From NCBI GenBank assembly GCA_002269645.1, contig NIVC01000001.1:930001-994000 (forward strand): 64,000 nt of DNA. The letters are read 5' to 3'. The notes under the pieces were generated by a model that did no database searches, was not told the DNA's origin, and worked only from the letters and a program-made list of their open reading frames with translations. Of this stretch, positions 2,611-49,888 are shown piece by piece. Both the position numbers and the translations under genes were made by a program. Origin of the DNA: Macrostomum lignano. Taxonomy: Eukaryota. How positions within the stretch are numbered: position 1 is the stretch's first letter; each line of letters opens with the position of its first letter.

Positions 2611-2944
2611 TATTTTCGCTGATGCATTTTTGGAGAAATAAGACTTTCGAATGTTTTCTCACAATACTATTATTTTTGTGTTATGTCATGTTTGCTTTAG
2701 CTAAGTTAAAACAGTTTAATTTATCTCCTGAGCAAAGAGCTTTTTACGTTAATCTAGATAAAGTTTGTGCTTGATTCAAAAGTAGCGTTCCAAGCTGATC
2801 TTGTCTTATCCACTGATGCTTATTACTGGCCTCAGTGACCCAATGCTAATTGAATTTTTACCCTTGTTTTAATCCCACAGAGAAATTGTACGCGCAATCA
2901 CATTAGGTAATACAATATAACTCCTACCTTCGTAACTTTAATTC

Positions 2945-3240
2945 CGAGAGATGGGGTAAAAGAAAAGTCAGAAGATAGGAGAGAAGAGGGGAGAGGAGAA
3001 GGGAGAGAGGGGAGAAGGGAGAGAAGAGGGAAGAGAGAAGAGAGAGGAAAGAGAAGAGGGGAGAGGTAGAGAGGAGAGGGGAGAGGGAGAGAGAGGGAAG
3101 GAGGTGAGAAGAAAGAGCTGAAGAGATATCGACCTTGAGCGGGCCGGATTGCAATTGTGAAGTTCCAAAGGACCCGAGGACCGGATAGAGAGGCTTTGCC
3201 GGGCGCATGTGGCCCGCGGGCCGGAGTTCGCCGACCCCAG
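2945..3240. mobile_element. Partial hAT (Charlie-like) MITE with GA-rich interior
   Basis: Its end, CCGGATAGAGAGGCTT..GCGGGCCGGAGTTCGCCGACCCC, matches the end of the complete element at 22825-23152. The left TIR was not found. Confidence 0.6.
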
Positions 3241-3467
3241 GTGTAGGGTATTGGGTCGGGCTCCGCCCACGCGTTTGAACTAAAAGAGTTACCAAGCTAC
3301 GAGCTACCAGTAACACAGGGAGCAAATAGAGCTGAAGCCGAAATCCAAAATTCTCGGGTTGAACCATAGATCTTATGTATCCCGTATCCCGTATATGTAT
3401 TTTTGTAAATAAGATCCTTGAGTTGAACAGTTCGCTTCATTCCACTAGACAACGAGAATATAATAGG

Positions 3468-3950
3468 AAAGAGAGAGAGAGAGAAGAGGAGAGAGAGGGA
3501 GAGGAGAGAGGGAGAGAGAGGAAGAGAGAGGGGAGAGAGGGGAGAGAGAGAGAGCGAGAGAGAGAGAGCGAGAGAGAGAGCGAGAGAGAGAGCGAGAGAG
3601 AGCGAGAGAGAGAGAGCGAGAGAGAGCGAGAGAGAGAGCGAGAGAGAGAGCGAGAGAGAGAGCGAGAGAGAGAGCGAGAGAGAGAGCGAGAGAGAGAGCG
3701 AGAGAGAGAGCGAGAGAGAGAGCGAGAGAGAGAGCGAGAGAGAGAGAACGAGAGAGAGAGAGAGAGAGCGAGAGAGCGAGAGAGAGAGAGCGAGAGAGAG
3801 ATCGAGAGAGAGAGCGAGAGAGAGAGCGAGAGAGAGAGCGAGAGAGAGAGCGAGAGAGAGAGCGAGAGAGAGAGCGAGAGAGAGAGAGCGAGAGAGAGAA
3901 CGAGAGAGAGAGCGAGAGAGAGAGCGAGAGAGAGAGCGAGAGAGAGAGAA
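3468..3950. repeat. (GA)n/(GAGAGC)n microsatellite
   Basis: Directly visible; it produces the spurious ER-rich and SL-rich ORFs. Confidence 0.98.
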
Positions 3951-6447
3951 TTGTCTAAACGCAAGAACTGCCACTCCCAGACCGCATGTTTGGGAACAAT
4001 ATATCTGAAGGTACAGCGGCACAAGTTATCAATTCAAAACGTAAACAAAACCGCGGAGCTGATGCAGGAAAAAATTGAAGCAAATTATGTTCAAAGCAAA
4101 GAGTACCGAGCTAACAGTTATTTCGGGTAAAAATCTTTAGCAACTTCTAAATGCCTCAACGATGTCCACGTTTTCTAGAGTCAGCACAGGTGTCCGCAGC
4201 TGTCGTGTGTCTCTTAAGATGTGTTCCTGACAAATTCTTGTCGTTTTCGTGACTTTTACATCTCCTCGAAGTCCAACTCGACAAGGCCAGCAAACGTTGG
4301 TTTCACAAATGAAAAGAAAAGTAAGATGGACCAATGACGCAGTGGAGTTGGAGCGCTGATCGGACCGTATCAGAGAAAAGAGAATTTCCAGTTTTTTATT
4401 AGAATTGTATTACGGAATCAAGAACTGACAACACATTTACTCGTATTTACCAAAGCTTGCTATTCGCCCTGATATGGCCCTGCATGACGGTTGAGAAATG
4501 TGCTAGCTACAGTGAACACTACTTTCTCGTGTGAAAAAGGTCCTCAAATGGATAAATTACTGACGTTAATGGCGATTTTTATAACCATTGACATATAGCC
4601 AAGCATTCTTAAATGGATTTACTGCACGGCTTGGGATTTACTGCACAGTCGCGTTATCTATCTATGTCTATGGCTAAAACCAGAAGAATGCTTTGCTCAT
4701 AAATCAATGAATCTATCACTAGGTTCCTTAGAATGCGTTAGCGCACTCGTGCCATAGACTATTCACGCACTCGAAACCTAGAGATAAATCTACCATTTAT
4801 GCTTTGATGAACATTGTTAAATGGTTAGCTTGTAAGAGAAGGTATCTATACACAATAAAAAGATAATAATTTTCGACTTAATAAAAATGGGGAGATCGGC
4901 AGCCGGAGATCCTAAATCAAACCTTAGTTTTTGCACTCGTGGCGGAGATCGGCAGCCGGAGATCCTAAATCAAACCTTAGTTTTTGCACTCGTGACGGAG
5001 ATCGGCAAACGGTGCATAGTGCATAATCTCCAAGGGGACAACAGAATCTGGTTTAGGATCTCCGGATGAAGAGCCCTGCCCAGTGCCCATGCCCCGGAGA
5101 TCCCACAAAGGTTACGGTAGTATTCTTAGTCTCCGTAGGAGATCTTAAACCTTTTAAAGTCCCCGGTCGGAGATCCCAGTTCGTTTGCAGTCTCCGGATC
5201 GGCGACTCAAAACTGGCCGGAGCCCCAGAGATTCTAAACCGTAATACCGGCTGGTTCGGGTCGACGTCCGGCTCCAAGAACAGTGCAAAGGCTATTTAAA
5301 ATCTGAAGACGGTCGCTCCAGAACAATTACCTCAAAATTTCATCACAAACAACAAAGAACCAAGACCCATAAAGATGTGATTCAAGAGTTAAGGGCCAAA
5401 TGTACTTTGAATCAAGCTGCTGCATCTCGGCTGAATTCTTCAACCGTCAGATTCACTGCTTAGCAGCATTTTGCCACGCAATACTACTGATCAAGAGGCA
5501 ACTTCAGCATTGGTAGTGGTGGCAGTGCAGGTCTCAGGAGCTTTTGGAAGCAGCCACAGAAACTTCTGGGCAAGCACCACATTAACATAACGAAAGCAGG
5601 CAAAGACTATTTTGAGCTGCTATATTTCTTAAATTGTAGTCTATTCGAAACCAGTAAATTTATTCCTTTATGGCTGCCTTCTTTTGAGTGATTCTTTTCG
5701 GGAACCTTGATAGTCGGGGGTGCTGTAGATTTTTGCCAGAGCGTCATACAACGCCGGTGACAGCGGTGTAGGGTACACGAGTGATCCGATACTAAACTAT
5801 ACTTATGCGGTAGTATTCAGTGTATAAGTACCAACGAGTGTCGCAACACCTCTAGTAGCAACGCGAATTCTGAGCTTCATCACGCCAAACCGAGCTCACT
5901 GTGCACACAGAGCGTCACTACGTCTGTCCTTTCATTCTACTGAGATTTTTAATTAGGGCGCGTTGGTTATTTTTCAAAATAGAGTAAAATTACGCTCGTA
6001 CATAAGGTCCAAAACAAAACATATCAGTAAAATACATGCTTCAGCTCATTGTAGGAAAAAGTACCATGCTATGAATACTTCGTATTACCGAAAGCGTAAA
6101 ACAATGAAAACGGTTACCACAAGAGTCAAAAATTAGCAGTAGCATTTTATAATAAAATCAGAATAGGTGAAAATATTGTAATTTTGCCTCTGAATGTCAA
6201 GTTAGCCTGATCAGGCTCTAACAGATGGCAAGGTAAAGTAATTATGATCCCATTAAGTGGAAAAACTCGGAAGTAACATTATACACTCGTACTGCTTTGT
6301 AAAAAAACTACAATTATAGTGAAATCATCCATTATCCGCGCTGTCGATCACTTGAACCCCGCTCGGCTTCGACTCTGCAACCTCCACCGAGTCGCTGAGC
6401 TCTCTCGGAATTAAGCTGGCTCCCGGGTAGCTTTGCATGAGAGGCAA

Positions 6448-9447
6448 TTAATCTCTGAACAGTTCTAGCAAACTGGCGGCAAAGTCAGCGCTTGGATCCA
6501 TCGACGAACTCTCGTCTTCGAAACCCGTGACGTCATCCCATTCGACCACCTTGAAACAGTTGCCTCCCTCCTCGGCGAACTTGACCAGAGCGTCGCGGAA
6601 CTCGGCCAGATGAGCTCGCACATCGCCAGTCCTGATGCCGCCGACTCTGCACTCTGCCTGCTTCCGGATGCCGAGCACGCAGGTAGGAATTTCGAACGCG
6701 ATTCTCCTCGATCGCCAGTCGTGCACTCGGAACGAGTAGCGCCTGCCGCTGGCCGCTCGAAACTCGTGCACACTCGACTGAGCTCCGAGCTCCGCGAGCC
6801 GGCTCAGCAACTTGGACTCGTCCGGGTAGCGACCGCTCTTCGGGATCACGAACGTGTACGGCAGGTCGAACGGGATTGGCTCTGCAGAGCTGGACAGCTG
6901 CTGCATGTCTGAAATGAGTAGAGATGCTCAGTTAGACCAGCAGCTAAGACCAAGCTAATACTCGTAGTAATGACGTGACATCAGTTTTGAAATAAGTCAC
7001 TACTTACAATCACTGAGGGGCTGCGCGAATCCGATCCACGTGTTTGCCGCCATCGCGAACGCCATCGACATCAGAGGAAGCTCGTCTCTGACCGACTCTG
7101 CGCTTGACTGCTGAGCAGCTCTCGATACGAAACTCCACTCGTCAATCAACAGAAAGTCCTCAACTGCAGCAAGCATCTGTGACCGTAAAGAGTCACCGTC
7201 CTCCGCGATGTCGATCACGTGAAGCGAGCTCGGCTCCGACTCCGCTACCTCCTCCGAGCTGGTGTCGCTGAGCTCTCTCAGAATCGAGTTCGCTCTCGGG
7301 TGGCTCTGGATGAAGCGCAACTCGTTTCTGAACTGCTGGAACATTGCCGTCTTGTCCTGATCGGCCATCCTGAGCTTCTGCATGACGAACATGGGTGCAG
7401 CGTAGCCGCAGAAGACCACTGCGTGCGAGTAGGTCGACTGGTCCTTCGTGAGCGGCCTCTCCAGCTGCAGCAGGTACGCCGTTACTCGCTTCTTGTAGCC
7501 GGGACTGTCGAACTCGAGACACAGCTCAGTCGATGCGGTGCTCACCTTGCTGCATCCAGGAAACAGCATCTGTGGACACACACAGGATACCGGCTGGTGC
7601 TGGCTGCTCACGGCGCGCTCGTCCAGCAGCAAGAAGTACTTGGGGACGACTAGGATATTGCTGGGGTTGACATCGGTGAGTCCGAAGTTTATGAGCACTT
7701 GTTCTCGGATGAGGCCTTGAGTATCGAGCAGTGACGAGCGGATCTGGCGTCGCATGTTGGGCAGCACGTAGCCGAGGAACCCGGCGGCCAGTTGCCATGC
7801 GAAGCTCTCGCCTGGGCTGCTAAAGCCGCTGTATTCTGAAAGGATTTGCAAATGGTGCGGAGAGAAGCTAATGCTTTACCTTTTAAGTTTCATCTATATT
7901 AAGTGATGCAGTAAGCTTTTCTGGCTATGCAGATCAGCGGCGAAGTAATTGTTTATTTGAGTTGGAATTATAGTGATGATAAATTCTTCTTTTAATGACC
8001 ACCTGGGTTCCAAAAGTTACGCAAAATGAATGCACAATTTCGTAAGAAAAAAAGTCTTTTGTTTCAAAATTCCATACTTACCTAGTTCTGTATTGTTTAA
8101 ATCTTCCAAGAGTTTTCCAACTCTTTTCGTATTCAAATCGTGCAGTTTCAGCACCTTCATCATTCGTGTTGGAAGCAGCTGCGACAGGTACAGGTGACTG
8201 TCTGTTTTGCTTCTGTAGTTCTTGATTAGGTGGGCCATGCGCTTTCTTAGCCTATGACACTGTAATGTTTGCATGGTTTTGAAAGCAATAAGTATCGAGC
8301 CTTGACCTTGGGCTTACTAAATTGCCCTGTGCTCCAATTGCAAGTGGAGGCAAATGATTACTACAGAATTCAACTGCAACCTGAGTTCGCAAATTTGCAT
8401 TGGACCGTTTGAATTTTTGATTGTAGCCTAAAAGTCTACATTCTTCCTACATGAATCTGTGTAGGTAGAAATTGCAAAATAATAACTTTTTTACTTAATA
8501 TGCATATACCAATTTATCAACAATTTTCTCAATCGCAAACTCAATTAGTTTCTTTCTTAATTTCCTAGCCCAAATAACTACATTTACTTGTAACTTTGCA
8601 TCAATTAATCCTTTTTAAATTTGTTGGTAACTATAGCGAAGTAACGAGAGGATTCAGAAAAGGGTAACAATCGTTATGCTGCATGCCATCAATAAGTTCC
8701 ACTCTACCTTAAAAAATAGATATCTATAGATATCTATAGATATCTATCTAGAAAAAAAAATAGCTCCATACCAAGACGCTCTACACTACCAAGATACTTT
8801 ACACCACCATGTCGCTCTAATCTACCAAAACGCTTTACACTGTCAAGACCCCTACACTACCAATAAGATTCGCAATACCAATAAGATAGTGATGGTTCGC
8901 TCTTATCAATAATGTCCCCTTAATTATTTTAAATAATTGCTTCGAGCAGAAAAAAGCTAATAAGTCCTCGCGCGAGTGCCTCTAAATCTTGGTGAGATTC
9001 AGAAAATGATCAGCAACAACGTATAAGAACTTGTCAATCCTTACCCTCTCCACTGTTTGTCTAAGAAGTTTGGTCAGAAGTGTTGCAGATTCCGGTTGAA
9101 ATGCAGTAAAAGAGTTAAATACTAGTAGAACTTGATGACTTTCATCAATGCTGCTGTACACGGAATTCCCAGAGTTGCAAGGATGTTCTACCAGATTCAA
9201 ACAGCCTCTCAGGAGATCAACGACATTGTCATAGAGTCGGTCCTCCCCGTCACTGGAACCAACCACGATGATGGTGACGGTTCTGTTTCTGTCTGAAAAT
9301 ATTTAGTCGCACTCTTACTGCATCAGAATTCGGTTGTACTAGTATTGAGAGTTATAACAGAAACTGTGCACCGTCTATATACTGTAGTAAATTAACAAAC
9401 ATGCGATAGAGTCACGTACCTTGATTGAAGAATTGATGGCTGCACAT
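6448..9447 (-). CDS. STING-like copy A: TIR-like domain plus two tandem STING CBDs (about 580 aa if started at ATG 9447)
   Basis: Exons 9447-9420, 9292-9045, 8259-8082, 7835-7008 and 6908-6448; all GT-AG, phases 1/0/1/1 consistent. CBD1: GESFAWQLAAGFLGYVLP..PGYKKRVTAY..CGYAAP. CBD2: SMAFAMAANTWIGF..PYTFVIP..GRRYSFRV..FEIPT. Compare STING GLAWSYYIGYLRLILP / GIKDRVYSNSIY / LEYATP. The true start is uncertain. Confidence 0.75.
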
Positions 9448-9824
9448 ATATACTCGATCAACATGAGATTTATAGAATTCAATTTTTTATGCACTGAAAC
9501 AGCTTCAACAGGTTAGAAAGCAAAAAGTCTTCAGTAAGTTTAAGGTTACCGTCAAGATCCGAACTTCCACTAAAGCATCTCTACGTCAAACAATGGTACA
9601 GCTAATAGATAAAAATAGTCAGACAGAAAAACCAAGGCAATACCGCGGACTTGCTGTGGACGTTCCGTATGAACCCCGTCTTCGTGTCTATTATCTGCGA
9701 TACAATCTAGTTTATTTTCAAGCAAATAAACTGTTACATATGACAGATTAAGAGAGCATTGAAACAACCTCACAGATAGCGCTTTATAAAAAGTGTCTAC
9801 CTCTGAGTCTCTTATGTTGGCCAT
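9448..9824 (-). pseudogene. Disrupted 5' exon region of copy A (possible degenerate first TIR-like domain)
   Basis: An acceptor (ctatag) lies 4 nt before ATG 9824. The ORF YVTVYLLENKLD..QQVRGIALVFLS loosely resembles the first exon of gene F, but has a TAG at 9570 and no splice route I could find to the 9420 donor. Confidence 0.35.
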
Positions 9825-10069
9825 TTAACTATAGCCTCTATTGTAACTACTGAACCACAACGCTAAGAATATTTCTGAATTCTTTCTTTTTGCAGATGCA
9901 ACCAGGAGGGCCAACAGACAGTCTCCTAAATGTCCAGATCGTCTTACTAAAATTAGTTTGACGATACTACAGAGACGTTAAAATGTTTTAATAGCGCTAG
10001 TAAAAAAAAAGAAAATTTTTGTTGTTCTTCCTTCTTCTGATTACACGGAAACCTGTCTGGCAGAGCGAC

Positions 10070-10620
10070 ACACCACCAGGCAGGCGCGCGGATCCAGCCC
10101 ATGTTATCAGCGGCCTCCGAAAAAACCGCGACGACCGAAAGCCAACCTCAGATGACGCAGAAGAAGGGTTCGAGTGGACGTTTCCTGGCCGAGCGGCAGA
10201 GGCGCAAAAAAGACGCGTGGCGTCGAACTTGGTCGGCGAAACTCCTCGACGTCGGCACTCCTAAGGAGAGCAGAAATAAATATCGCAACCAATTCGTAGG
10301 CATCCTGAAGTTGTCCATGCCGCCACTGCAAAGAAAACTAAAAGACAAAGCGGTAGGACCGTCCGAGACGAGGTCCCAGTGGAGGCCCTGCGGCTATCAC
10401 AAGCGTGATGAACCGTGAACCGCGCGTACTTGATGGCGCCCACCACATGGAACACAGCACACATTGTGCCGACCCCGAAGAAGGCCGGTACAACACAAAA
10501 AGAAAGCCAACCCTGAGATCTTGCTGAGGTACATGTACTGCGTATCTCCAATACGAGCATATCGGGTTACCGTTTGACCGAAATCCTCCCACTTTTCGTT
10601 TCCACGAACTTCCAGAAAGC
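10070..10620 (+). mobile_element. Decayed non-LTR retrotransposon (LINE) ORF2 fragment
   Basis: Across frameshifts and stops it reads ..RDEVPVEALRLSQA**TVNRAYLMAPTTWNTAHIVPTPKKAG, resembling the pre-RT motif GPDxxPxExLK..PxxWxxAxIxxIPK. Confidence 0.6.
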
Positions 10621-11376
10621 TGAGGCCGAGCTACGATTTTAATTGCTTCAGTCCATCAGGTTTAACGGCAGATGATCGCCGCTATCATTTCATTGTGTCG
10701 CGGTGAAACTCTGCGACACAGTGGCGCTGGAGAAACGGATGGCGACAATGTGACTCTGCCTCACTAAATCCGTATAAGAGATTTCAGTTTTGCTTTAATG
10801 CTTAAATTCTTACCAGCACATGTAGCGGTAACTCTTTTCTTGAACGTGATTTTACTACCCGCGGTTATTTACGGATTTACAGAGAGCTGATAAATTACGC
10901 GATTCGTACGTTATCTTTGTTATTTTTATACATCCTGTTCTTAAACAGCAGCTGTCCACTGCGATCGAATGATATGGCATGGCAAAAAACAATCTAGCTC
11001 GTAATGACTGAAAAAATATCAAGCACCTGCAACAAATGGGTTCATTTCACAATCGTAAATCACTAAGAATTTCATAGAAAACTCAATTGTATTCAGTATA
11101 CATAAACTAAACAGCAACGATCGCAGACAGACAGGAATAAGCGCCAGCCCCCACAGAAGAAGGTTAGCGTAAAAAGCCTGAACGTTATTGACTTCTTCCT
11201 GCAGAATCTGTGTAGACTAACAACGAGCTAAATACAATAATTTGGCAGTCTGGCTACATGTATAACTGTATCATGCATCAAGGAAATGTAATCAATGAAA
11301 GTAGCGACGGGTATGCAATTGTCAGGTCGTATAGAACGTCTTGATAATATTTCGAATAGAAATTATTTCTAAAATA

Positions 11377-12143
11377 TGTAGTGACTGGCTGCTAACTGGC
11401 TATTCAGCAGCACTCACTAGCTTTCCCTAAGAGTGCTGTGATCCGCTGCACAGTAGCTCGGTCCACCTGATCTAGTGAGAGAGTTACCCTGTGCTGGGCC
11501 TAAGTGTTTACTGCCCGATGACTCATCGCCTGAGCGGGTGCGGCAGCCACACAAAATGTCTTCCCCTCCCGCGCTGAGGAGGCGAAGCAGGATGACTCAT
11601 CACCTGCGCGGAGTGTAATGGCTACCTAGAGGGAGTAAACAGGATGACTCATCTGCCCAAGTTATTTTTAGCACAGAATAAGCACGTGACTGTGCACGCA
11701 CGCTGTGCGTGGCCACTGACCTTGAGTCACGCCACTGCTGCGTGACAGGGTTGCCTTATTTGGAAGTTGGCCTTGGATCACGAGTCGCTCGCATGATTCT
11801 GAGGACCAAATAAGGAAGTTTCACGCGCTCACCGCATGAAACTCACGTGACTTTTGGGGGTCCGCTCGGCTATAAATACGGAGCATCTGAGAGCCGTTTT
11901 TCTCCAGATCGTGAGCCGCGTTAGGGAGCTTCCTCGACTCGAGCTGCCTCTGCCTTCGAGCTCTCCTCTCTCATTTCAGGTTTTTCAGGTTTTCAGGTTC
12001 GAGCAGCATTCTACTAAGACGATCGACTGTCGAGACATTTTCAGATTTGCCTTTGCTCCGAGCGACTTTGTTATATATTTTATTTCAGGTGACGGATAGA
12101 CAACTCTGCCGACGCGTCGAGTCCGCACACCAAGGTGGCAGCA
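11377..12143 (+). mobile_element. LTR-like element (probable solo LTR) inside the STING cluster
   Basis: Starts TGTAGTGA and ends GGTGGCAGCA, like the element at 61039-61860. Contains GGCTATAAATA (TATA at 11871) and four TGA(C/G)TCA sites. No target-site duplication found. Confidence 0.45.
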
Positions 12144-12687
12144 ACCCTACCAAGTCAAGGCTAACGTTTTAGGTTCATTTTCAGGCAAATCGATAAGTAG
12201 TACAACGTTGCTATCTAGCTACTTCAGGAGCAGCGGGTTCTATTTCTAGGAAAATCTTTAAGAACCCGAGAAGGAGTAGTACTTCAAATACATGCACAGT
12301 AAAGCAGATTGAAATAATATTTAAGTGAAGTATGTGGTAGGAATTTTGAGATATTTATTTCACCAACAAAAAACACCAACAAATGTTGATTCATTGGCAA
12401 GCAAAAACTGGCACAAAATGGATTTTCATATTTATCATACAATACTCTCGAGGAGTTGCAGGAGTGAAGTCTTCACAGGAAAATTAGGAATTCTAATGAC
12501 TAACAAGTTTAGAGTACAGCAACTAACTAGTCAAGCGGGTTGATGACTATTGAGAGATTAGTTTTATCCATACATTACAAAAAGAGGAAATGCACATGTG
12601 TTAGTCTGCTGCTATCAACAAGCTGAGCAAAAACCTAAAAAATTATTTTCGCCTTGCCCTACCAGTAGGTGACGTCATCACATTCGG

Positions 12688-14151
12688 TCACTGACAAATT
12701 ACATCGTCATATACATGTAACATCTCAAAAAAGCTGGCGGCAAAGTCGGCGCTCGGATCCATCGACGAACTCTCGTCTTCGAAACCCGTGACGTCATCCC
12801 ATTCGACCACATTGAAACGGTTGCCTCCCTCCTCGGCGAACTTGACCAGAGCGTCGCGGAACTCGGCCAGATGAGCTCGCACATCGCCAGTCCTGATGCC
12901 ACCGAATCTGCACTCTGCCTGCTTCCGGATGCCGAGTACGCAGGTGGGAATTTCGAACGCGATTCTCCTCGATCGCCAGTCGTGCACTCGAAACGAGTAG
13001 CGCCTGCCGCTGGCCGCTCGAAACTCGTGCACACTCGACTGAGCTCCGAGCTCCGCAAGCCGGCTCAGAAACTTGGACTCGTCCGGGTAGCGACCGCTCT
13101 TCGGGATCACGAACGTGTACGGCAGGTCGAACGGGATTGGCTCTCCAGAGCTGGACAGCTGCTGCATGTCTGAAATGAGTAAAGATGCTCAGTTAGACCA
13201 ACAGCTAAGATCAAGCTAATACTCGTAGTAATGACGTCACATCAGTTTTGAAATAAGTCACTACTTACAATCACTGAGGGGCTGCGCGAATCCGATCCAC
13301 GTGTTTGCCGCCATCGCGAACGCCATCGACATCAGAGGAAGCTCGTCTCTGACCGACTCTGCGCTTGACTGCTGAGCAGCTCTCGATACGAAACTCCACT
13401 CGTCAATCAACAGAAAGTCCTCAACTGCAGCAAGCATCTGTGACCGTAAAGAGTCACCGTCCTCCGCGATGTCGATCACGTGAAGCGAGCTCGGCTCCGA
13501 CTCCGCTACCTCCTCCGAGCTGGTGTCGCTGAGCTCTCTCAGAATCGAGTTCGCTCTCGGGTGGCTCTGGATGAAGCGCAACTCGTTTCTGAACTGCTGG
13601 AACATTGCCGTCTTGTCCTGATCGGCCATCCTGAGCTTCTGCATGACGAACATGGGTGCAGCGTAGCCGCAGAAGACCACTGCGTGCGAGTAGGTCGACT
13701 GGTCCTTCGTGAGCGGCCTCTCCAGCTGCAGCAGGTACGCCGTTACTCGCTTCTTGTAGCCGGGACTGTCGAACTCGAGACACAGCTCAGTCGATGCGGT
13801 GCTCACCTTGCTGCAGCCAGGAAACAGCATCTGCGGACACACACAGGATACCGGCTGATTCTGGCTGCTCACAGCGCGCTCGTCCAGCAGCAAGAAGTAC
13901 TTGGCAACGACTAGGATATTGCTGGGGTCGATATCGGTGAGTCCGAAGTTTATGAGCACTTGTTCTCGGATGAGGCCTTGAGTATCGAGCAGTGACGAGC
14001 GGATCTGGTGTCGCATGTTGGGCAGCACGTAGCCGAGGAACCCGACGGCCAGTTGCCAAGCGAAACTCTCACCTGGGCAAGCGTTTCTTCGTTGAACCGA
14101 ATTGTCGTTAATCTTTTTAATAGATGTACAGGTATCATTACTGGATTGCAT
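12688..14151 (-). CDS. STING-like copy B: tandem STING-STING without an intact TIR exon (454 aa from ATG 14151)
   Basis: Exons 14151-13269 and 13169-12688 with a 99-nt phase-1 GT-AG intron as in copy A. Near-identical to A from PGESFAWQ onward. The upstream acceptor of A/C is replaced by unrelated open sequence. It could be a 5'-truncated pseudogene. Confidence 0.6.
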
Positions 14152-15279
14152 CTTTGATCTTTTGACAAATCTCTGATGTGTTTGAGTCAAACTGGAACAC
14201 TCTCCAAACGCTACGGTTTCTTATTGTGAGGAGAGACTTTGTATCCTCTTATTTCAGTTGATTTTTGTTCCTTTAACGTTGTCTGCTACATGAATAAAAA
14301 CGTTGAGTTTGCCGTGGAAATTCCATGAAAAAGCTTGTGTGCCGCGTACGAGTTGGCTGGTAAAAACGACGGTATTTCCGCGGGAAGTCCTCGGACAAGC
14401 CCCGGAATCTTTGCGAAAACATTTTAGTTCCTAATAAGACGGTCACTTTGAAACGTAGAAGTACTGCTGTTTATTGTAGTTTGAAAGTGAATTCTCCATT
14501 GCTAACCTCTGTAGGACCTATCTTCCCCAGCCGTTAATTCTAGTAGAATCAAGATTTAGTATAGGAGGATTTGTTAGTAAAGTGTATTTAAAGGCAAAAT
14601 ATTGCGTTCGCATATTTTTTGGAATGCAGTTCTCGAATGCTTTGATTTAATAACCCAATGATAATGATTTCAGTTATACATACAATGAATATATGTACAC
14701 ATAGTTAAGAAATTAAATGGTTAAATCAATGGACTAGAACGCGAAAAGCGAAATTCAGTTTTTGCCCGTAAACTATTCAAGCACTGGCGTTTTACGCTTG
14801 AATTATATTGGCTCTACAAAAGCGGAATATACAATAGTTTTATTCAGATGGCTTGAATGAATGGCTACCCGGAAGGATTATTTATATGTACAAGTCTCAG
14901 GCGCTAGTGATTAGGCAAAATAACAAGGAAGATTGACAATGAAAATGCAATACTCGTACGCATTGATAGAGTTTGAAATACTGACACGAGCACAGATGCG
15001 TCCATCAATCAAAATTGACAGTAATCCATAGACTTATTAATTCCTTGCTGCCATTATACTTCTTTTACGAGTATTCCAAAAAATCCGACCGATCCAAGGA
15101 TTCTTGACTGCTAGACCCAATAACGCCATGTCTACCACGATTGAGACGATAGCAGATTCCAGATCGCAGAAAACGGCATGTTGCAGGTCCGTTAATGCTC
15201 GTGATTTTGCAGTCGCTTATAAATGCCAAGGACGTCAGCCAGAGAAGGATGGATTTTATAGCGTGAATCATTTCTGCTT

Positions 15280-17499
15280 CTAATCTGTTGCTGTCAACAA
15301 GCCAAGAAGAGATTTTGCTAACTCGATGTTGTTCGGTTCGGTCACAAAGCATTCATCGAAACCAGTGACGTCATCCCATTCGACCACGCTAAAACGGTTG
15401 CCTTCCTCCTCGGCGAACTTGGCCAGGGCATCGCGGAACTCGGCCAGATGAGCTCGCACATCGCCAGTCCTGATGCCGCCGAATCTGCACTCTGCCTGCT
15501 TCCGGATTCCGAGCACGCATGTCGGAATTTCGAACGCGATTCTTCTCGATCGCCAGTCGTGCACTCGAAACGAGTAGCGCCTGCCGCTGGCCGCTCGAAA
15601 CTCGTGCATACTCGATTGCGCTCCGAGCTCCGCGAGCTGGCTCAGAAACTTGGACTCGTCCGGGTAGCGACCGCTCTTCGGGATTACGAATGTGTACGGC
15701 AGATCGAACGGGATTGGCTCTGCAGAGCTGGACAACTGCTGCATGTCTGAAATGAGCACAGATTCTCAGTCAGGCTAGCAGGTATGACGTATCTAATAGC
15801 AATGACGTATCTAATAGCAATGACCTATCTAATAGCAATGACGTATCTAATAGCAATGACGTATCTAATAGCAATGACGTATCTAATAGCAATGACGTAT
15901 CTAATAGCAATGACGTATCTAATAGCAATGACGTATCTAATAGCAATGACGTATCTAATAGCAATGACGTATCTAATAGCAATGACGTATCTAATAGCAA
16001 TGACGTATCTAATAGCAATGACGTATCTAATAGCAATGACGTCACATCCGTCTTAAATACGCCACTACTTACAATCACTGAGTGGTTGCGCGAATCCGAT
16101 CCACGTGTTTGCCGCCATCGCGAACGCCATCGACATCAGGGGAAGCTCGTCTCTGACGACTGACTCTGAGCTTGACTGCTGAGCAGCTCTCGATACGAAA
16201 CTCCACTCGTCAATCAACAGAAAGTCCTCAACTGCAGCAAGCATCTGTGACCGTAAAGAGTCACCGTCCTCCGCGATGTCGATCACGTGAAGCGAGCTCG
16301 GCTCCGACTCCGCTACCTCCTCCGAGCTGGTGTCGCTGAGCTCTCTCAGAATCGAGTTCGCTCTCGGGTGGCTCTGGATGAAGCGCAACTCGTCTCTAAA
16401 CTGCTGGAACATTGCCGTCTTGTCCTGATCGGCCATCCTGAGCTTCTGCATGACGAACATGGGTGCAGCGTAGCCGCAGAAGACCACTGCGTGCGAGTAG
16501 GTCGACTGGTCCTTCGTGAGCGGCCTCTCCAGCTGCAGCAGGTACGCCGTTACTCGCTTCTTGTAGCCGGGACTGTCGAACTCGAGACACAGCTCAGTCG
16601 ATGCGGTGCTCACCTTGCTGCATCCAGGAAACAGCATCTGCGGACACACACAGGATACCGGCTGGTGCTGGCTGCTCACAGCGCGCTCGTCCAGCAGCAA
16701 GAAGTACTTGGCAACGACTAGGATATTGCTGGGGTCGATATCGGTGAGTCCGAAGTTTGTGAGCACTTGTTCTCGGATGAGGCCTTGAGTATCGAGCAGT
16801 GACGAGCGAATCTGGTGTCGCATGTTGGGCAGCACGTAGCCGAGGAACCCGGCGGCCAGTTGCCATGCAAAGCTCTCGCCTGGGCTGCTAAACGAGTTGT
16901 CTGAAAGAGGAGGCCATTGTGCATGTGTTTTTCTTATTTTTTAGTCCGTATTGTAGGTATTGTACAGTAGTAACTAATGTATGGTTTATGTTATTAAACT
17001 TTGACCTACCATTGTGGTTTTCTCTCAGTATTTCTTCGAATTTTTCCATGGATAACGCTTGAAGATCGTAGGACCAGAAGACGTCGCTGCGGTTCTTTTC
17101 ATGCGTTTCGGTATCGTTGCGATTGTCATTGTTTTTCACTACATGAAGAACTTTCCTTCTTTTGTTGAGGCACTGGAAAATAAATAAAATTCCTAGTTAA
17201 TGCATGTCGTTGTTTGATATTCTATGTCCATATAATGAAATAGAAATGTCAATTTGACATACCAAATCTACGGCTAGTGACCATAGTGATCGTATTGGAT
17301 GTGTTTTTATCTCAGGCCTTTGATTTTCTACTATCACAATTGCATCGGAGACTTCTATTTGCTTCTCAAGTTCCACAGTGTCTTTCACATCGGAAACAAC
17401 AACATCTACTTGGCCAAATACACGCTTGAAGATTCTTAGCAGACAGTCGCGTTCAACAATTCCTTGCTCAGCGGCTCCGATGGTAAATATCAAAATCAT
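15280..17499 (-). CDS. STING-like copy C: TIR-like domain plus two tandem STING CBDs (564 aa)
   Basis: Exons 17499-17263, 17172-17010, 16900-16073 and 15746-15280; all GT-AG, phases 0/1/1, open throughout. An acceptor (tttcag) lies 3 nt before the ATG. The N-terminus MILIFTIG..QIEVSDAIVIVE..SLWSLAVDL|CLNKRRKVLHVVK has a TIR-like beta/alpha pattern. Confidence 0.8.
15784..16044. repeat. 18-bp minisatellite ATGACGTATCTAATAGCA x14 in the last intron of copy C
   Basis: Directly visible; absent from the 99-nt paralogous introns of A and B. Confidence 0.97.
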
Positions 17500-18134
17500 C
17501 GTCTGAAAGGAAAAAAGCAAAAGTTAAAATCAGTACAAAACCTTTCAGTACTTTCCAAGCCGTAGAAGATTAACTAATTCAGATTTTATTTATTCAGAGC
17601 AGCCAAATCAAAATTGTCTCCGTCGACTGGTATGAATAGCCAAGTTGCATTTTTTGCATGTCTCGTAATAAAGCGCCCAATTATACTACGAATTATACAG
17701 ATTCTGGATTAAGCGTATTCCATTTCACGTTCTATTCTAATGAGTTCGACTTCCTAACTCATCCGCACGTGGGTCATTCTGAGCAAATTTTTAAGTGCTA
17801 AGCAAATTAGTTAGCTACCGATCTACCAGTGTAGGAAACCAGTGTGTATTTGCACTGATGAAAAGGCTTTTGGGATGGATGTTCGGCATTTACCGATGAT
17901 TCTAGCTGCTGGCTTCAATTCTGTTCAGGTCAATGGACTTCACTTAAGACGAGAGCCGAGACAAGAGTACTGCTTGAAGATAAATGCTGAAGCTTTTGGT
18001 TGGAAATTTGTGCTTTATTGAAGCTAAGCCTAAGTTCGGCACTTCTGCTCTAAACCAAAACGGCATTTAGTTAAACATTTTTTCTAGCATTTTAAGTATT
18101 CTATAATTCCGCCCACCATTTCAAGCGATAGTTG

Positions 18135-19743: not shown

Positions 19744-20574
19744 CTAATCGTAGTTTGATTTAAAGAATTTTCTCGATTCGTCATCTGCGAAGACCCTCTC
19801 GAGCGCGTCCGACGGCGCCAAGTGTCGACAGAAAGTTTTCGTCAGGCCAGTCCAGAACCCGAACGAAAGTTCAGCCAGCATGGTCTTGAATGTCATGATG
19901 TACTCGTCAAGGTTCTGCTTCAGTCTCGTCCGACACACGCCTCCGACGCCGCTCTTGGCTTGCCCGCGAAGGTTCGCACGGCGGCACATCAAAGGCCGCT
20001 CTTAGCTCTCCGCGCGAGTTTGACTTTGATGTGTAAAAACTGAAACTGTAATAGCTGTTCTCGTTGTCTTCAAACTGACTCCAAGCTCACTTGGACTGGT
20101 ACAAATAAATGATCGAACGTGAGCGTAACGATGTTGTTTTGACACCAGCACATTGTCCTGATAATTTGAAACGGATTCGCTGCCAAGAAACGACAATGAG
20201 GCCGACTTTGCTGGCGCTGCACTGCTTGCTGTCTGAAAGTCCGAAAATCAAACTTGAATTTTAGATTTCTGCGAGTTCTCGATAGAGTTGGAACTAGCCA
20301 CTTGCCCACACCCTCTCGAGCAAAAGGACACCCAAAAGATGAAGACTTACCCCCCCCCCCACTCTGAGAGTTTCTTTACCGTAGTAGATAATCAATCATC
20401 TTACAGTTAACATGCATTAAGACATGCAGCAATACCTTTGGAATTTCGTCGCAATGCCTCATCAATTTGTTGCAGATTATTAGAACGTCGAAATTTGGAT
20501 CAAAAGCAGACTGGTTCGCAGGTCAGCAACACGGACCTGCAGGCTTCCAGATGACTCCATGCTTCAGCGTCAAC
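19744..20574 (-). pseudogene. Frameshifted relic (D) of a gene-F-type TIR/STING gene
   Basis: 19760-20050 is clearly similar in DNA to the last exon of F, with a 5-nt deletion (TGC-GAAC versus TGCGTGCTGAAC, ~19975) and further indels. 20574-20436 resembles the first exon of F (GTTGACGCTGAAGC versus GCTGACGCAGAAG; RSVLLTCEP versus QSVVLVCDP) with an in-frame TGA. Confidence 0.75.
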
Positions 20575-23736: not shown

Positions 23737-26700
23737 TTACTCCAAGCGAAGATTTGCCACATCGGCATGTTCAGCTTCGACATCAGCGAATACGAGGTCC
23801 CGCAGGCTCTCTGCGTACTCGCGCGTCGGATGGCGCCAAGTGTCGACAGGAAATTTGTCGTCAGGCCAGTCCAGCACTTGAACGGATTTCTGCCAGTCCA
23901 TGCACTCAAGCATGGTCTTGAATGCCATGATGTACTCGTCAAGGTTCTGCTTCAGTTTCGCCCGACGCACGCCTCCGAAGCCGCTCTTGGCTTGCTTGCG
24001 AAGGTTCAGCACGCACGGCGGCACCTCAAAGGCCACGCTTAGCTCTCGCGAGTTTGACTTCCAAGTGTACAAGCAGAACCGATAGTTTCTGCCCTCGCTT
24101 TGAAACGTGTCTTTCTTAAAAGTGACTCCCAGCTTACTGAGCTGCTCTTGCAGTTCGGAATACTCAGGATACCGCGCACTGCGTGGTACAACGTACTTGT
24201 AAGGCAGCTTGAACGGCAGTCTGCCGGCTTGTTCACCTGGGTAAAGATTCAGGCAATTTTGTTAAAAAATCATTTTCACGCACCGAATGGGAGTGTACCT
24301 GATATGGGGGTGAGCCACAGTACCGTAGCTGCAACTGCCGCCGACAAACTAAGACTTACATTGAACCAAATGATGAACAAATCCAAAGCAGGAGTTTGCA
24401 GCCATTGAATAAGCCATGGACATCAGAGGAAGGTTTTCATCGACCTTGATAGTAGGATTTCTAAGATCTAAAATTGTCAATTGTAGACAGTAAAATACTT
24501 ATAAAACATTATGACCAAGTTTCACTAATTAATAGAGAAACTTAAAAGTACTCAAAAATAACTTACTTAGACGTTGAATTAATTCGTGGAATGAACAATG
24601 CCTTGATTCGCCCTCAGAGAAAGCAAACTGAATATTGTCTAATCTGTCGTTTGTTAGATTTAGGATAGACACAACATTATTCTCAGGAAGAATTTGCAAT
24701 GAAGACGGTAGGACGCTGTAGATGTCTTTATTGACATTTTGGGTGATGACAACGACCACCAGATTGTACTCCTGACGCATGTGAATCTGAAATTGACCAA
24801 TTAGTTTTATATGATAAAACTATGTGACGTTATCACTTATAGAAATGAAAACTTACGTAAGTCACAGCTGATGTTATGTCTCGAAGCAAGTGGTTGTGCT
24901 TTTTATCACTGTAGTCAAAGCTGCTGTACTCCTTGTTGAAACACTCCAAGTCTTGGAGAGATGCAAACAAAATCATTCGCCGGCATTTGACGAGAACTTC
25001 GGCAAACGTGTTGTTTAACAGCTGGAAATTTTCTACACGAAAGCCTTCTTCTTGCTCGAGCCTTTCGACGACAGCATCGTGAAGCTCTTCGACTGACCTT
25101 GAAAACTTGACAACTAAAACGTCACTGTCAACTTGATGATGATTATCAATCGATCGGATAGGTTCATTGCGGCGATCATTAAAAATTTCCTCCTTGATGC
25201 GGGAGAGAAAGAGTTTATCCCAGTTATCGTCAGACTCCCCCTTCTTACGCTCAACAATACAAGCTGCTTTGTCAAAATTCGCAGACTTGTCAGGCAGGAC
25301 GTCTACAGAACCGAATTTTGCAAGCAGCTCGTTTGCTTTGGGGTGGTTCAAAATGAACTGCAACTCTTCCTTGAAGAGCTTGTAGGCATTATGCAGCATT
25401 TCTTCTGAAACATCTAAATCTTTGATTCCTCGAAGCTCGCGAATGACAGTGACTGGAGGAGCGAAGCCTCCCAAGATTATTGCGTGGCTGTAGCGCTCAG
25501 ACTGAGAGATTTTCAATTCTTCACCAAATTTGACAAGGTAGAGAGGAATTGTTTTGGAATAACCTGGACTTTCAAACTCTAATGTTATAGGCTGCGCACA
25601 ATGTTGCGGCGGTGCACATAATTCCTCATTGTCTGCAGGACTAGAATTCGAAGTCATTACTGGTTCACTCAGTGTGCGTTGAATCTTGCAACATGTAGCA
25701 AAAAGCTTCTCCGGATTTGGATTCACATGACTGTCACTGTCGATGTCGTCCTCCTTCAGTAGCACAAAGTACTTCTTCAAAACGAATATTTTTTTTTGAT
25801 CAATGCTGCCAAGACCACATTGATCGAGCAATTCTGCTTTTAAGAGGCTACTGTCATTAGTTACTTGGTCTCTCAAAACCTTGCCGATATTAGGCAAAAT
25901 ATATGCCAAGAAACCTGTGGCATACTGCCAAGCAAGACCATTTCCAAGGCTCCCAAATACCATACTTTTGCTTACTTCTACAGCTGCCTCTTCAGTCAGC
26001 CACGCTTTGACAGCTTCTTGAATTGCGCCCAAACTGCAGGGCCCAACTGCACGGACAAAGCTCTGAATGCGGTGGTTTTTAAGCACGGTGTCTCCGTCAG
26101 ATCCATCAGAGGCAGCGTACATCTTGACGATGTACATGACTGGCTCTCTCAGAGCAATCATCCTGTCAAAAGCCATCTGGTACAGATGACCGCGAGCGTG
26201 GCTCGAGATTTCTCCTGGTGGCTTGAAGTACACAACGATCACTTTGTCACACTCAGCCATGTTGTCGGAAATGGCATTCCATTCAAAGCAATTTGGATCT
26301 CGTTGGCGCAAGCGAAATCCCGAGTGCAGAAGGAAGTTGATAAGCGAATCGAAATCATCCATCTGTTTGCTGCTGGCTGCTGTATCGCCAACAGGTAGCG
26401 CAAAGATAATGTCTGAAATGAAAATAAAAATTACTGAAATATTGCTGCTTACAATACGGTTCATACAGTATCTGAGACTTAATTACATGTAAATCCTATC
26501 TACCTTTTTTTAGCCATATTTGCAACTCGGCTTCCATGTTCTCAACTGGTATTCTTCTGACATCTTCGCGTTTTCCGACTTTTTCTAGCAGCTTTTCTGC
26601 CGCAAGATTTTCCGCTTCGACAATGAGGACGCACTTGTTGCAGTCTTTGGCTCGCTGGAATGCGCAATAATAACACGGGATACTAGTGTGGGCCTGAATA

Positions 26701-26980
26701 ATGTTGAGAGTACTCCCAGAAACACTCAAGAATCAAAACCAATTACCTCGAGAAGACGCTCAACATTGCCGATAAATTTGTAAGACCATCCTTTCGACAC
26801 AACCAGAATAAGTCGATCAGAGTTCTCGACATCATTAAGTGTTTGAGTCTTAACGACATAGCAGGATTCGGAATCAAGAACGGCGTGAATTCTCTGCCTG
26901 ATGTCGCTTGGGTCGCAGACGAGCACAACCGACTGACTGCGGGTTGGCTGAAGGCTTGCTGCTGCCTCTTCTGCGTCAGC
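23737..26980 (-). CDS. Gene F: TIR-TIR-STING-TIR-STING protein (at least 935 aa; no in-frame ATG at its 5' end)
   Basis: Exons 26980-26747, 26693-26504, 26412-24857, 24786-24567, 24467-24360 and 24236-23737; all GT-AG, phases 0/1/0/1/1, open throughout. CBD1 GNGLAWQYATGFLAYILP; CBD2 SMAYSMAANSCFGF..EGRNYRFCLY..FEVPP. TIR-like units: SVVLVCD..VENSDRLILVVS; IIFALPV..MAECDKVIVVY; DVLVVKFS..VVERLEQEEGFRV..CRRMILFAS. Confidence 0.8.
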
Positions 26981-33592: not shown

Positions 33593-33657
33593 TTGTATAC
33601 ACTATGCGGGAGGCCACACTGGAGAGAGAGAAGCGGCACCGAGAGAAGCGACTTTTG

Positions 33658-34028
33658 TCACCGCCTGGCAGCCATGCCGCGAACACAGGCGGACTGGCAC
33701 AGGCCCGCCAGGCCGCGGTTCCAGCCGGTGCCGCACGGCGACTCCTGGCTGCACATCCCGGAGCGCAGCGCCAGGTCGCGCCCCTCCAGCAGGACGGCGC
33801 AGACCCGGCCGGCGCCGACGCTTACGCTGGCGACGCCGCGACAGACCAGCTCCCAGTCAGTGCCGTCGGGGAAATCGCGGGGCTGAACGTTGCGACGCCG
33901 ATAGAGGCAGCCGGATTCGTCAACAGCCCACAGCTCGCGCCCGTCTGCTGACACCTGCGATTGAGGCGGGGGGTCAGGAACTCTGTGTGGACAGACAGAC
34001 AGACACTAAGGTAGGCAGACAGAAGGAC

Positions 34029-34107
<79 letters not shown>

Positions 34108-49490: not shown

Positions 49491-49888
49491 GCGGGCGAGA
49501 ATAAGAATCTTGCATTAGTTCAGTACAAGTTAGCAGATGTGGCAGCTCTAACACTATATTAGCAATACAATACTTGCATAAGTGTGATCTCAAACGTGAA
49601 GCAAAACACTAGCAAACACAGTGTGAAAAACAAAACACTTCCAGCGCTAATGAATGACGCGGCAATCAGTTAGAAATAGATTTCGATTACACAGGCAATT
49701 GCTGAAAACCTTCAGTATCGAAAATTATCCGTTTTCCAACTGATAGCTGCTATTTAAAGATTCAAACAGAGAGCTGCGCTACTATGAGTAACATAGAAAA
49801 ACAATCGATGAGAATTACAACACGCTAGCTAGTTTAGCTCAGAAACACACGCTATGTTAAACAGGTCAGGCTGTGGCAGTTCAGACTG

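What the first reader, a model, noticed from the sequence alone, without database searches (positions are those of the whole stretch)
6448..17499. Tandem STING-STING in one chain with a degenerate CBD1 and a conserved CBD2: possible asymmetric single-chain pseudo-dimer
Seen: in A, B and C a phase-1 intron joins SMAFAMAANTWIGFAQPLSD to YMQQL..PYTFVIP, completing a second CBD about 25 aa after the first. By-eye alignment to human STING: CBD2 keeps R238/Y240 (GRRYS), E260 and T263 (FEIPT). CBD1 keeps the Y167-equivalent aromatic and R238 (KKRV) but has Y240>T, E260>G and T263>A. Gene F shows the same polarity (CBD2 GRNY, FEV; CBD1 GGFAPP). Established: STING binds one cyclic dinucleotide at a two-fold homodimer interface. 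Inference: two unequal CBDs in cis could form an asymmetric pocket for a mixed-linkage or mixed-base ligand, or CBD1 could act as a ligand-independent polymerisation module.
Basis: partly seen in the sequence, partly recalled or inferred. Interest (0 to 1): 0.88.

Follow-up and report, generated by a model that had tools for sequence, protein, structure and literature searches.

The report
Flatworm proteins with two STING domains
A cluster of Macrostomum lignano (flatworm) genes encodes soluble proteins with two very divergent STING-type nucleotide-sensor domains in one chain. The first domain has lost the ligand-contact residues and the second has kept them, which makes this a candidate hidden STING receptor in a phylum thought to lack STING.

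Summary
Genes A (6448-9447), B (12688-~14190), C (15280-17499) and F (23737-26980), all on the minus strand, each join two STING ligand-binding-domain (CBD) folds in one reading frame. They are joined through a conserved phase-1 GT-AG intron.

Sequence tools mostly miss both domains. Pfam gives one sub-threshold hit, and an exhaustive HMMER profile search of 1.84 billion proteins finds only M. lignano paralogues. The evidence that does support STING is:
- AlphaFold models of the whole protein and of CBD2 alone each return only STING structures as the top 50 Foldseek hits.
- CBD1 aligns to a STING profile at E 4e-6.

- CBD1: E260>G, T263>A/P, Y240 lost, R232>S.
- CBD2: R238, Y240 and E260 kept, with F at Y167. 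The CBD2 alignment is weak.

Both domains are under purifying selection (dN/dS 0.1-0.3).

The single-chain pseudo-dimer idea is neither supported nor refuted. The ~25-29-residue disordered linker is long enough, but no interface could be examined.

Closest known are the oyster TIR-STING proteins, including an annotated class with two STING and two TIR domains. I rate this a new variant of a known kind, of moderately high interest. M. lignano has cGLR enzymes, and no STING is reported for it in the papers I searched.

The parts
15280..17499 (-). Gene C, identical to P0004 (564 aa). Four exons: 17499-17263, 17172-17011, ~16901-16073 and ~15746-15280 (boundaries +/-2 nt). Domain order: N-terminal alpha/beta domain, CBD1, linker, CBD2.
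   Evidence: Exact peptide mapping; splice contexts; AF2 and Foldseek.
16212..16895 (-). Gene C CBD1 (aa ~136-363). STING fold with the alpha1 motif SFAWQLAAGFLGYVLPN. Pocket residues are substituted: Q for S162, S for R232, T for Y240, G for E260, A for T263.
   Evidence: hhalign Prob 87%, E 4.4e-6. Profile search against PDB sequences: nearly all listed hits are STING chains. Foldseek.
16146..16211 (-). Gene C inter-domain linker (aa ~364-385, extending to ~392 by DSSP). Predicted disordered, pLDDT 23-38.
16074..16145 (-). Gene C CBD2 alpha1 helix (LPLMSMAFAMAANTWIGFAQPLSD). It is encoded in the same exon as CBD1.
15283..15746 (-). Gene C remainder of CBD2: beta1 YTFVIP, GRRYS, AFEIPT and the C-terminal helices.
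15747..16072 (-). Gene C phase-1 intron between CBD2 alpha1 and beta1. An 18-nt minisatellite (15784-16042, 14.4 copies) has expanded it to ~326 nt. The same intron is ~100 nt in A and B.
6448..9447 (-). Gene A (N-terminus like P0003). Exons at about 9447-9421, 9293-9045, 8250-8083, 7835-7008 (CBD1, linker and CBD2 alpha1) and 6908-6448 (rest of CBD2 plus the stop codon).
12688..14190 (-). Gene B, a 5'-truncated copy. Homology to A and C begins at ~14078, at the start of CBD1. No N-terminal domain exons were found. Both CBD exons are intact (14073-13269 and 13169-12688).
23737..26980 (-). Gene F, 922 codons in 6 exons: 26980-26747, 26654-26504, 26412-24857, 24786-24567, 24467-24360 and 24236-23737. 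Domain order: two alpha/beta domains, CBD1, a further alpha/beta domain, CBD2. Close to P0006.
   Evidence: Spliced translation with no stop codon; P0006 match; Pfam STING_LBD hit on alpha1, E 0.0011.
6328..6477 (-). Relic of a CBD1 C-terminal segment just downstream of the gene A stop codon. It looks like a remnant of the tandem duplication.
   Evidence: tblastn, 50% identity over 52 aa.
19832..20100 (-). Frameshifted relic of an F-type CBD2 (…RAAFDVPPC… / …QAKSGVGGVCRTRLKQNLDEYIM… / …VLDWPDENF…).

Best explanation
These genes encode soluble proteins with no transmembrane segment, and they form a highly divergent STING family seen only in Macrostomum. Each protein carries two STING ligand-binding-domain folds.

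The likely ancestor had the order (alpha/beta domain)-STING-(alpha/beta domain)-STING, which F and P0005 still show. That order resembles the oyster class annotated with two TIR and two STING domains. A, B and C have lost the internal alpha/beta domain, which leaves STING-linker-STING.

CBD2 is compact, about the size of a bacterial STING, with a 5-residue beta2-beta3 turn in place of a long lid. It keeps the nucleotide-contact set: N for S162, F for Y167, R238, Y or F at 240, and E260. I take CBD2 to be the module that binds a cyclic dinucleotide or a related cGLR product.

CBD1 keeps the STING alpha1 dimerisation motif but has fixed non-binding residues at the pocket. I take it to be a ligand-blind STING module retained for pairing or oligomer assembly, not a decaying remnant.

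Ligand binding would drive oligomerisation, and the N-terminal alpha/beta (possibly TIR-like) domain would signal, as in TIR-STING proteins.

Shown here: gene structure, the two folds, the residue pattern and purifying selection. Inferred: ligand binding, which domains pair with which, and the output.
For: Gene structure and one-chain continuity.

Folds: the top 50 Foldseek hits are all STING for the whole protein and for CBD2 alone. For CBD2 the bacterial STINGs fit well (TM 0.61-0.64, rmsd 4.0-4.8 A).

CBD1 to STING: hhalign E 4.4e-6 and 5.6e-5. The profile search against PDB sequences lists almost only STING chains. Pfam STING_LBD hit on F alpha1, E 0.0011.

Pocket mapping. Invariance of the substituted CBD1 residues and of the CBD2 motifs GR.[YF] and AFE.P across three lineages at 31-44% identity.

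dN/dS is 0.09-0.30 for both exons among A, B and C.

No transmembrane segment: the maximum 19-residue hydropathy is below 1.5 in P0003-P0006.

N-terminal domain: predicted beta-alpha-beta topology. Foldseek aligns 392 columns collinearly with a bacterial TIR-STING, 9lmq_A.

Context: five M. lignano cGLRs are listed in the cGLR screen (PMC9980059, supplement 3), and M. lignano does not appear in that paper's table of cGLR and STING gene counts. Oysters have an annotated class with two STING and two TIR domains (PMC11103948).
Against: No sequence method recognises CBD2 as STING (Pfam, PADLOC, PDB profile search; hhalign probability below 1%). Its residue equivalences therefore rest on a weak alignment plus a predicted secondary structure.

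Both AF2 models come from 5-sequence alignments (pLDDT 52.7 and 68.2).

T263 is not conserved in CBD2 of F or P0005. CBD2 has almost no lid, so R232-type contacts are absent.

The TIR identity of the alpha/beta domains is unproven: Pfam finds no TIR, and the PDB profile search gives only a SIGIRR TIR chain at E 0.79.

Gene B lacks the N-terminal exons and may not be expressed.

I do not know whether M. lignano also has a canonical transmembrane STING.
Confidence: 0.5

Rival explanations
1. CBD1 and CBD2 pair within one chain to form a single asymmetric pseudo-dimer. One face of the pocket is canonical (CBD2) and the other is altered (CBD1). This pocket would be tuned to an asymmetric ligand with mixed linkage or mixed bases, or possibly a linear or mononucleotide ligand. 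The analogy is the SAVED domain, which is a fusion of two CARF-like halves.
For: The ~25-29-residue disordered linker is long enough to reach across a STING dimer (inference). Both alpha1 helices keep the G-[FY] pair that aligns with G166-Y167, and both are among the most conserved segments. The substituted pocket residues of CBD1 are invariant rather than drifting, as expected if they still line a functional site. The asymmetry is conserved in three lineages.
Against: There is no evidence of a CBD1-CBD2 contact. The full-length model has pTM 0.43, and no coordinates or predicted aligned error were available. F and P0005 place a whole ~170-aa domain between the two CBDs, which an obligate intramolecular dimer does not require. 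Every characterised STING forms a two-fold symmetric homodimer (PMC9402430).
Confidence: 0.25
2. Neither domain binds a nucleotide. The STING folds have been co-opted as protein-protein scaffolds in an adaptor family unrelated to cyclic-dinucleotide signalling.
For: Divergence from all known STINGs is extreme: nothing outside M. lignano appears in 1.84 billion representative proteins. CBD2 has a truncated lid and T263 varies. CBD1 has clearly lost the pocket residues.
Against: CBD2 keeps R238, Y or F at 240, E260 and an aromatic at Y167 in all three lineages despite ~40% overall identity. M. lignano has cGLR genes whose products need a receptor.
Confidence: 0.17
3. Artefact. The STING resemblance is a modelling bias of AF2 on a shallow alignment, or the gene model wrongly fuses two genes.
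For: The alignments hold only 5 sequences and pLDDT is moderate. CBD2 has no significant sequence match to STING.
Against: Two independent models each give only STING among the top 50 hits. CBD1 has independent sequence support. CBD2 alpha1 is in the same exon and frame as CBD1. The intron position and phase are conserved in A, B, C and F. Independent database proteins P0002-P0006 have the same architecture.
Confidence: 0.05

Closest known systems
Oyster (Crassostrea gigas) TIR-STING proteins (PDB 6WT6/6WT7), and the oyster class annotated with two STING domains plus two TIR superfamily domains
   Same: Soluble lophotrochozoan STING proteins in which an N-terminal alpha/beta domain takes the place of the 4-TM domain. 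The oyster two-STING class has the repeated module order that F and P0005 show. C. gigas STING (8ydn) is the top Foldseek hit for CBD2.
   Different: Oyster STING domains are recognised by Pfam and InterPro; these are not. A, B and C have STING-linker-STING with no intervening domain. TIR identity is unproven here. I could not retrieve oyster sequences, so orthology and any CBD1/CBD2 polarity in oysters are untested.
Canonical animal TM-STING (human, Nematostella, coral; Pfam PF15009 with PF23417)
   Same: Same ligand-binding-domain fold. CBD1 shares the alpha1 motif (GLAW..G[YF]L..LP) and the xYAxP block. CBD2 shares the R238, Y240 and E260 constellation.
   Different: There is no transmembrane domain and no C-terminal TBK1-binding tail motif was seen. 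There are two ligand-binding domains per chain. Both score below the Pfam threshold. The CBD2 lid is reduced to a 5-residue turn.
Bacterial CBASS TIR-STING (SfSTING, FsSTING, CgSTING)
   Same: CBD2 has the compact size of bacterial STINGs, and those fit it best (TM 0.61-0.64, rmsd 4-4.8 A). The order of an N-terminal alpha/beta domain followed by STING is shared. The likely logic of ligand-driven oligomerisation is shared.
   Different: No sequence similarity was found: PADLOC and Pfam Prok_STING give nothing. The flatworm genes are eukaryotic and carry introns. They have tandem STING domains.
SAVED domain of CBASS Cap4 (a fusion of two CARF-like halves in one chain) - an analogy, not homology
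   Same: It is a precedent for a nucleotide-sensor dimer becoming a single-chain pseudo-dimer with unequal halves that reads asymmetric ligands (from my own knowledge of the field).
   Different: The fold is different. Pseudo-dimer formation is demonstrated for SAVED and is only hypothetical here.

Membership tests
STING ligand-binding domain (Pfam PF15009 STING_LBD) | Scores above the curated Pfam gathering threshold (27 bits) | tested here: not met
   A, C, P0003 and P0005 give no hit at E<=1. F gives 18.7 bits, E 0.0011, over alpha1 only (aa 285-311). CBD2 alone gives nothing at E<=10.
STING ligand-binding domain | The STING fold: a long alpha1 helix, a five-stranded sheet and alpha2-alpha4 in the canonical order | tested here: met
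   Foldseek against PDB: the top 50 hits are all STING for the full-length model and for CBD2 alone, probability 0.99-1.00. The order of secondary-structure elements matches. Model confidence is moderate.
STING ligand-binding domain | Alpha1 motif GLAWSYY.GYL..LP (dimer stem) | tested here: met
   CBD1 has SFAWQLAAGFLGYVLPN, and F has GLAWQYATGFLAYILPN. CBD2 has only WIGF aligned to YIGY, from a forced global alignment, so for CBD2 this feature is inconclusive.
STING ligand-binding domain | Cyclic-dinucleotide contact residues (S162, Y167, R232, R238, Y240, E260, T263) | tested here: inconclusive
   CBD1 does not meet it: Q, F, S, R (T in F), T/P, G and A/P, from an alignment with E 4.4e-6. 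CBD2 mostly meets it: N, F, no lid, R, Y/F, E and T/A/P, but on an alignment with E 0.06-0.3.
STING ligand-binding domain | Two-fold homodimer that binds one cyclic dinucleotide at the interface | not testable with these tools
   No multimer prediction, coordinates or biochemistry were available.
Animal TM-STING | N-terminal four-helix transmembrane domain (PF23417) | tested here: not met
   No Pfam hit. No hydrophobic 19-residue window reaches 1.5 in P0003-P0006.
TIR-STING (bacterial or oyster) | A TIR domain N-terminal to STING | tested here: inconclusive
   Predicted beta-alpha-beta topology and a 392-column collinear Foldseek alignment to TIR-STING 9lmq_A favour it. Against it, Pfam finds no TIR, PADLOC finds nothing, and the PDB profile search gives only SIGIRR TIR at E 0.79.
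Oyster class with two STING and two TIR domains | Repeated (alpha/beta)-STING module in one chain, and orthology to the oyster genes | not tested
   F and P0005 have the repeated order. No oyster sequence could be retrieved: the two remaining homology searches returned vertebrates and corals. The oyster class is known to me only from PMC11103948.

The most novel reading that the evidence does not exclude
The tandem is a single-chain, asymmetric STING pseudo-dimer: a STING counterpart of the CARF-to-SAVED transition. Its half-canonical pocket would read an asymmetric or non-canonical nucleotide made by the M. lignano cGLRs, for which no receptor is reported in the papers I searched. It would be the missing STING of flatworms.
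Probability: 0.2. Interest if true: 0.88.

Novelty: new variant of a known kind. Interest (0 to 1): 0.66.

Why it matters
Flatworms are described as lacking the pathway. No cGAS or STING could be found in the planarian Schmidtea (PMC13563047), and most platyhelminths have no cGLRs (PMC9980059). Yet five M. lignano cGLRs were cloned in the cGLR screen, and none of the papers I searched describes a STING for this species.

A STING-fold family that HMM searches cannot see offers a concrete candidate receptor. It also shows that absence of STING by sequence search can be a false negative.

The tandem with one ligand-blind and one ligand-competent domain is a natural experiment on what a STING domain does apart from binding ligand, such as pairing and filament assembly. 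It can also test whether a symmetric dimeric sensor can evolve into an asymmetric single-chain one.

M. lignano is a laboratory model with RNAi and transgenesis, so the idea can be tested.

Tried and rejected
Sequence searches that found nothing:
- Pfam on the tandem and on whole proteins gave no STING hit above threshold.
- PADLOC gave nothing.
- phmmer of the tandem against PDB gave nothing.
- The CBD2 profile against PDB gave only chance hits: a designed coiled coil and a bacterioferritin.
- The word-indexed homology search returned five M. lignano proteins only.
- The exhaustive HMMER profile search of 1.84 billion representatives returned three clusters, all M. lignano. The family cannot be linked to STING, to bacterial STING or to any other phylum by sequence. 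This also argues against a recent bacterial origin for CBD2.

CBD1 against CBD2 by BLASTP and hhalign showed no similarity. A recent internal duplication is therefore rejected; the two domains are anciently diverged.

My attempts to reach oyster two-STING proteins failed.

The profile of the alpha/beta domains against PDB gave no significant TIR match.

Paper PMC7572726 (Morehouse 2020) is not held.

I considered and rejected a gene-fusion artefact, because CBD2 alpha1 shares an exon with CBD1. I also rejected decay of CBD1, because dN/dS is 0.12-0.21 and the substituted residues are invariant.

Full report
**Source and gene structure.** The window comes from the flatworm Macrostomum lignano. 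A 421-aa translation of gene A matches five M. lignano proteins at 93-95% identity and nothing else. Gene C is identical to P0004 (564 aa) over four exons at 17499-17263, 17172-17011, ~16901-16073 and ~15746-15280.

tblastn finds four loci on the minus strand that carry both domains:
- A (6448-9447)
- B (12688-~14190)
- C (15280-17499)
- F (23737-26980)

There are also two relics, at 6328-6477 and 19832-20100. The second is frameshifted.

In A, B and C the exon ends ...AGT GAT T|GTAAGT and resumes TTTCAG|AC ATG CAG, giving ...GFAQPLSD-Y-MQQLSS... in phase 1. My six-exon model of F translates to 922 codons with no internal stop. It has a phase-1 intron at the same structural position, and it matches database protein P0006. 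The first helix of the second domain is in the same exon and frame as the first domain, so the two domains are unavoidably in one polypeptide.

**Are they STING domains?** Sequence methods largely say no.
- Pfam finds nothing in A, C, P0003 or P0005 at E<=1. In F it gives only a sub-threshold STING_LBD hit (18.7 bits against a cut-off of 27, E 0.0011) over the alpha1 helix.
- phmmer against PDB finds nothing, and PADLOC finds nothing.
- An exhaustive HMMER profile search of 1.84 billion representative proteins finds three clusters, all M. lignano paralogues.

Structure prediction says yes.
- The AF2 model of P0004 has a mean pLDDT of 52.7, but ~70-83 over CBD1. Its 50 best Foldseek matches in PDB are all STING, with E from 3.5e-5 and target TM-scores of 0.52-0.64 for ligand-binding-domain-only chains.
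- I modelled CBD2 separately so that CBD1 could not carry the result. That model has pLDDT 68.2 and pTM 0.62. Its 50 best matches are again all STING, from human, Nematostella, oyster and bacteria.

Independent sequence support exists for CBD1.
- A profile of five CBD1 sequences lists almost only STING chains among its PDB matches.
- It aligns to a deuterostome plus cnidarian STING profile with Prob 87%, E 4.4e-6 over 135 columns. Against a smaller profile the figures are 66% and 5.6e-5.

CBD2 has no significant profile match (E 0.06-0.08, probability below 1%). The alignment it produces is nevertheless collinear with the predicted secondary structure. CBD1 and CBD2 show no detectable similarity to each other, so this is not a recent internal duplication.

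**Residue polarity.** I validated my human STING sequence against PDB; query index i corresponds to residue 153+i.

For CBD1 the significant alignment gives:
- S162>Q
- Y167>F
- R232>S
- R238 kept in A-C and P0005, but T in F
- Y240 lost (T or P)
- E260>G
- T263>A/A/P
- P264 kept

For CBD2 the local and global alignments give GRRYS = D237-S241, AFEIPT = L259-P264 and WIGF = Y164-Y167. That means R238, Y240 (F in P0005) and E260 are kept, there is an aromatic at 167, and N replaces S162. T263 is T in A-C, A in P0005 and P in F. The beta2-beta3 'lid' of CBD2 is only a 5-residue turn, so there is no equivalent of R232.

The CBD2 equivalences rest on a weak alignment and need a structural superposition.

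Two points qualify the word 'degenerate'.
- CBD1 is the domain closer in sequence to animal STING. Its substituted pocket residues (Q, S, G) are invariant across three lineages that are only 31-41% identical.
- dN/dS among A, B and C is 0.12-0.21 for the CBD1 exon and 0.09-0.30 for the CBD2 exon. The counts are small but the values are consistent, so both domains are under constraint.

**Architecture and history.** None of the proteins has a transmembrane segment.
- C and A have an N-terminal domain of ~135-150 aa with a predicted beta-alpha-beta topology.
- F has two such domains before CBD1 and a third (~170 aa) between CBD1 and CBD2. P0005 also has the internal one.
- Foldseek aligns the full model collinearly over 392 columns with a bacterial TIR-STING (9lmq_A). 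That hints the alpha/beta domain is TIR-like. Pfam and a PDB profile search do not confirm it.

DNA homology among A, B and C begins only at the start of the CBD1 exon. The ~1.35-kb CBD1-CBD2 cassette is 97% identical behind unrelated 5' exons in A and C (N-terminal domains 22% identical). In B it sits behind no recognisable N-terminal exons.

The simplest history is an (alpha/beta)-STING-(alpha/beta)-STING ancestor, with loss of the internal domain in the A/B/C lineage.

**Mechanism.** Established knowledge is that STING binds one cyclic dinucleotide at a two-fold homodimer interface, closes a lid and then oligomerises. In TIR-STING this activates the fused TIR domain (PMC9402430).

My best reading (confidence 0.5) has three parts:
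- CBD2 is the ligand-binding module.
- CBD1 is a conserved, ligand-blind STING module kept for pairing or assembly.
- The output goes through the N-terminal alpha/beta domain.

- The linker of ~24-29 residues is predicted disordered (pLDDT 23-38).
- I could not inspect coordinates, predicted aligned error or a multimer model. The pTM of 0.43 gives no confident inter-domain geometry.
- The SAVED domain, a single-chain fusion of two CARF-like halves, is a precedent for such a transition. This is an analogy from my own knowledge.

**Comparison with what is known.** The closest known proteins are the oyster TIR-STINGs. [quoted passage not shown] Two STING domains in one chain therefore already exist as an annotation.

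In the papers I searched I found no description of any of the following:
- a direct STING-linker-STING arrangement
- an asymmetric pattern of pocket residues
- any STING in a flatworm

**Context that raises the stakes.**
- cGAS and STING could not be found in the planarian Schmidtea (PMC13563047).
- Most platyhelminths have no cGLRs (PMC9980059).
- Five M. lignano cGLRs are listed among the enzymes cloned for the cGLR screen (supplement 3).
- M. lignano does not appear in that paper's table of cGLR and STING gene counts.

I do not know whether M. lignano also has a canonical TM-STING.

**Verdict.** This is a new variant of a known kind, with interest 0.66.

Noticed in passing
window 7824-6518, 14078-12730, 16892-15355: The CBD1-CBD2 cassette (~1.35 kb) is 97% identical among A, B and C, but DNA homology stops exactly at the start of the CBD1 exon. 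A and C carry unrelated N-terminal exons (domains 22% identical) and B carries none. This suggests cassette duplication or gene conversion behind different 5' modules. The CBD2 exon of C is more diverged (dS 0.19-0.23) than its CBD1 exon (dS 0.06-0.07), so the history is mosaic.
   Followed up: partly
window 15784-16042: An 18-nt minisatellite (ATGACGTATCTAATAGCA, 14.4 copies, 99% match) lies inside the CBD2 intron of gene C. It expands that intron from ~100 nt in A and B to ~326 nt.
   Followed up: yes
window 19832-20100 (-): A frameshifted relic of an F-type CBD2 lies 2.3 kb upstream of gene C. Database protein P0001, from another locus and named 'HECT domain-containing', starts with the same kind of fragment fused to a C-type gene. 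That looks like an annotation merge of a relic with the downstream gene.
   Followed up: partly
window 6328-6477 (-): A 50-codon fragment resembling the C-terminal part of CBD1 (…RELSDSVEVAESKPSGVQVIDSADNG) lies directly after the gene A stop codon. It is probably a leftover of another truncated copy.
   Followed up: no
window 26980 (-), 5' end of gene F; 17499-17510 (-), 5' end of gene C: The F reading frame opens exactly at a splice acceptor (CACTTCCAG|GCTGAC...) with no upstream ATG exon before the neighbouring gene ends at ~27325. From memory, the M. lignano spliced leader ends in ATG, so trans-splicing may supply the start codon. Gene C also has an acceptor-like TTTCAG 3 nt before its ATG.
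   Followed up: no
window 53727-56772 (-): A BRD7/BRD9-like gene: Bromodomain (E 4.7e-26) at 56299-56772 and DUF3512 (E 6.4e-8) at 53730-54323.
   Followed up: partly
window ~2900-4130, 28445-30714, 32211-36221, 41611-42291, 44566-45788, 47115-53441: Large parts of the window are minisatellite arrays that give long spurious ORFs in several frames (SL/RE repeats, the 'PITKPGTKSHQILSNYQTRYKE' repeat, 'MVQGRFFG' and others). GC skew is strongly positive from 46 to 54 kb.
   Followed up: no
P0005 (M. lignano paralogue, not in the window): A third lineage of the family, named 'Death domain-containing protein' by UniRef, has the internal alpha/beta domain as F does. Its CBD2 motif is GRRF / AFEVPA. 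Pfam finds no death domain in the 698-aa sequence.
   Followed up: partly
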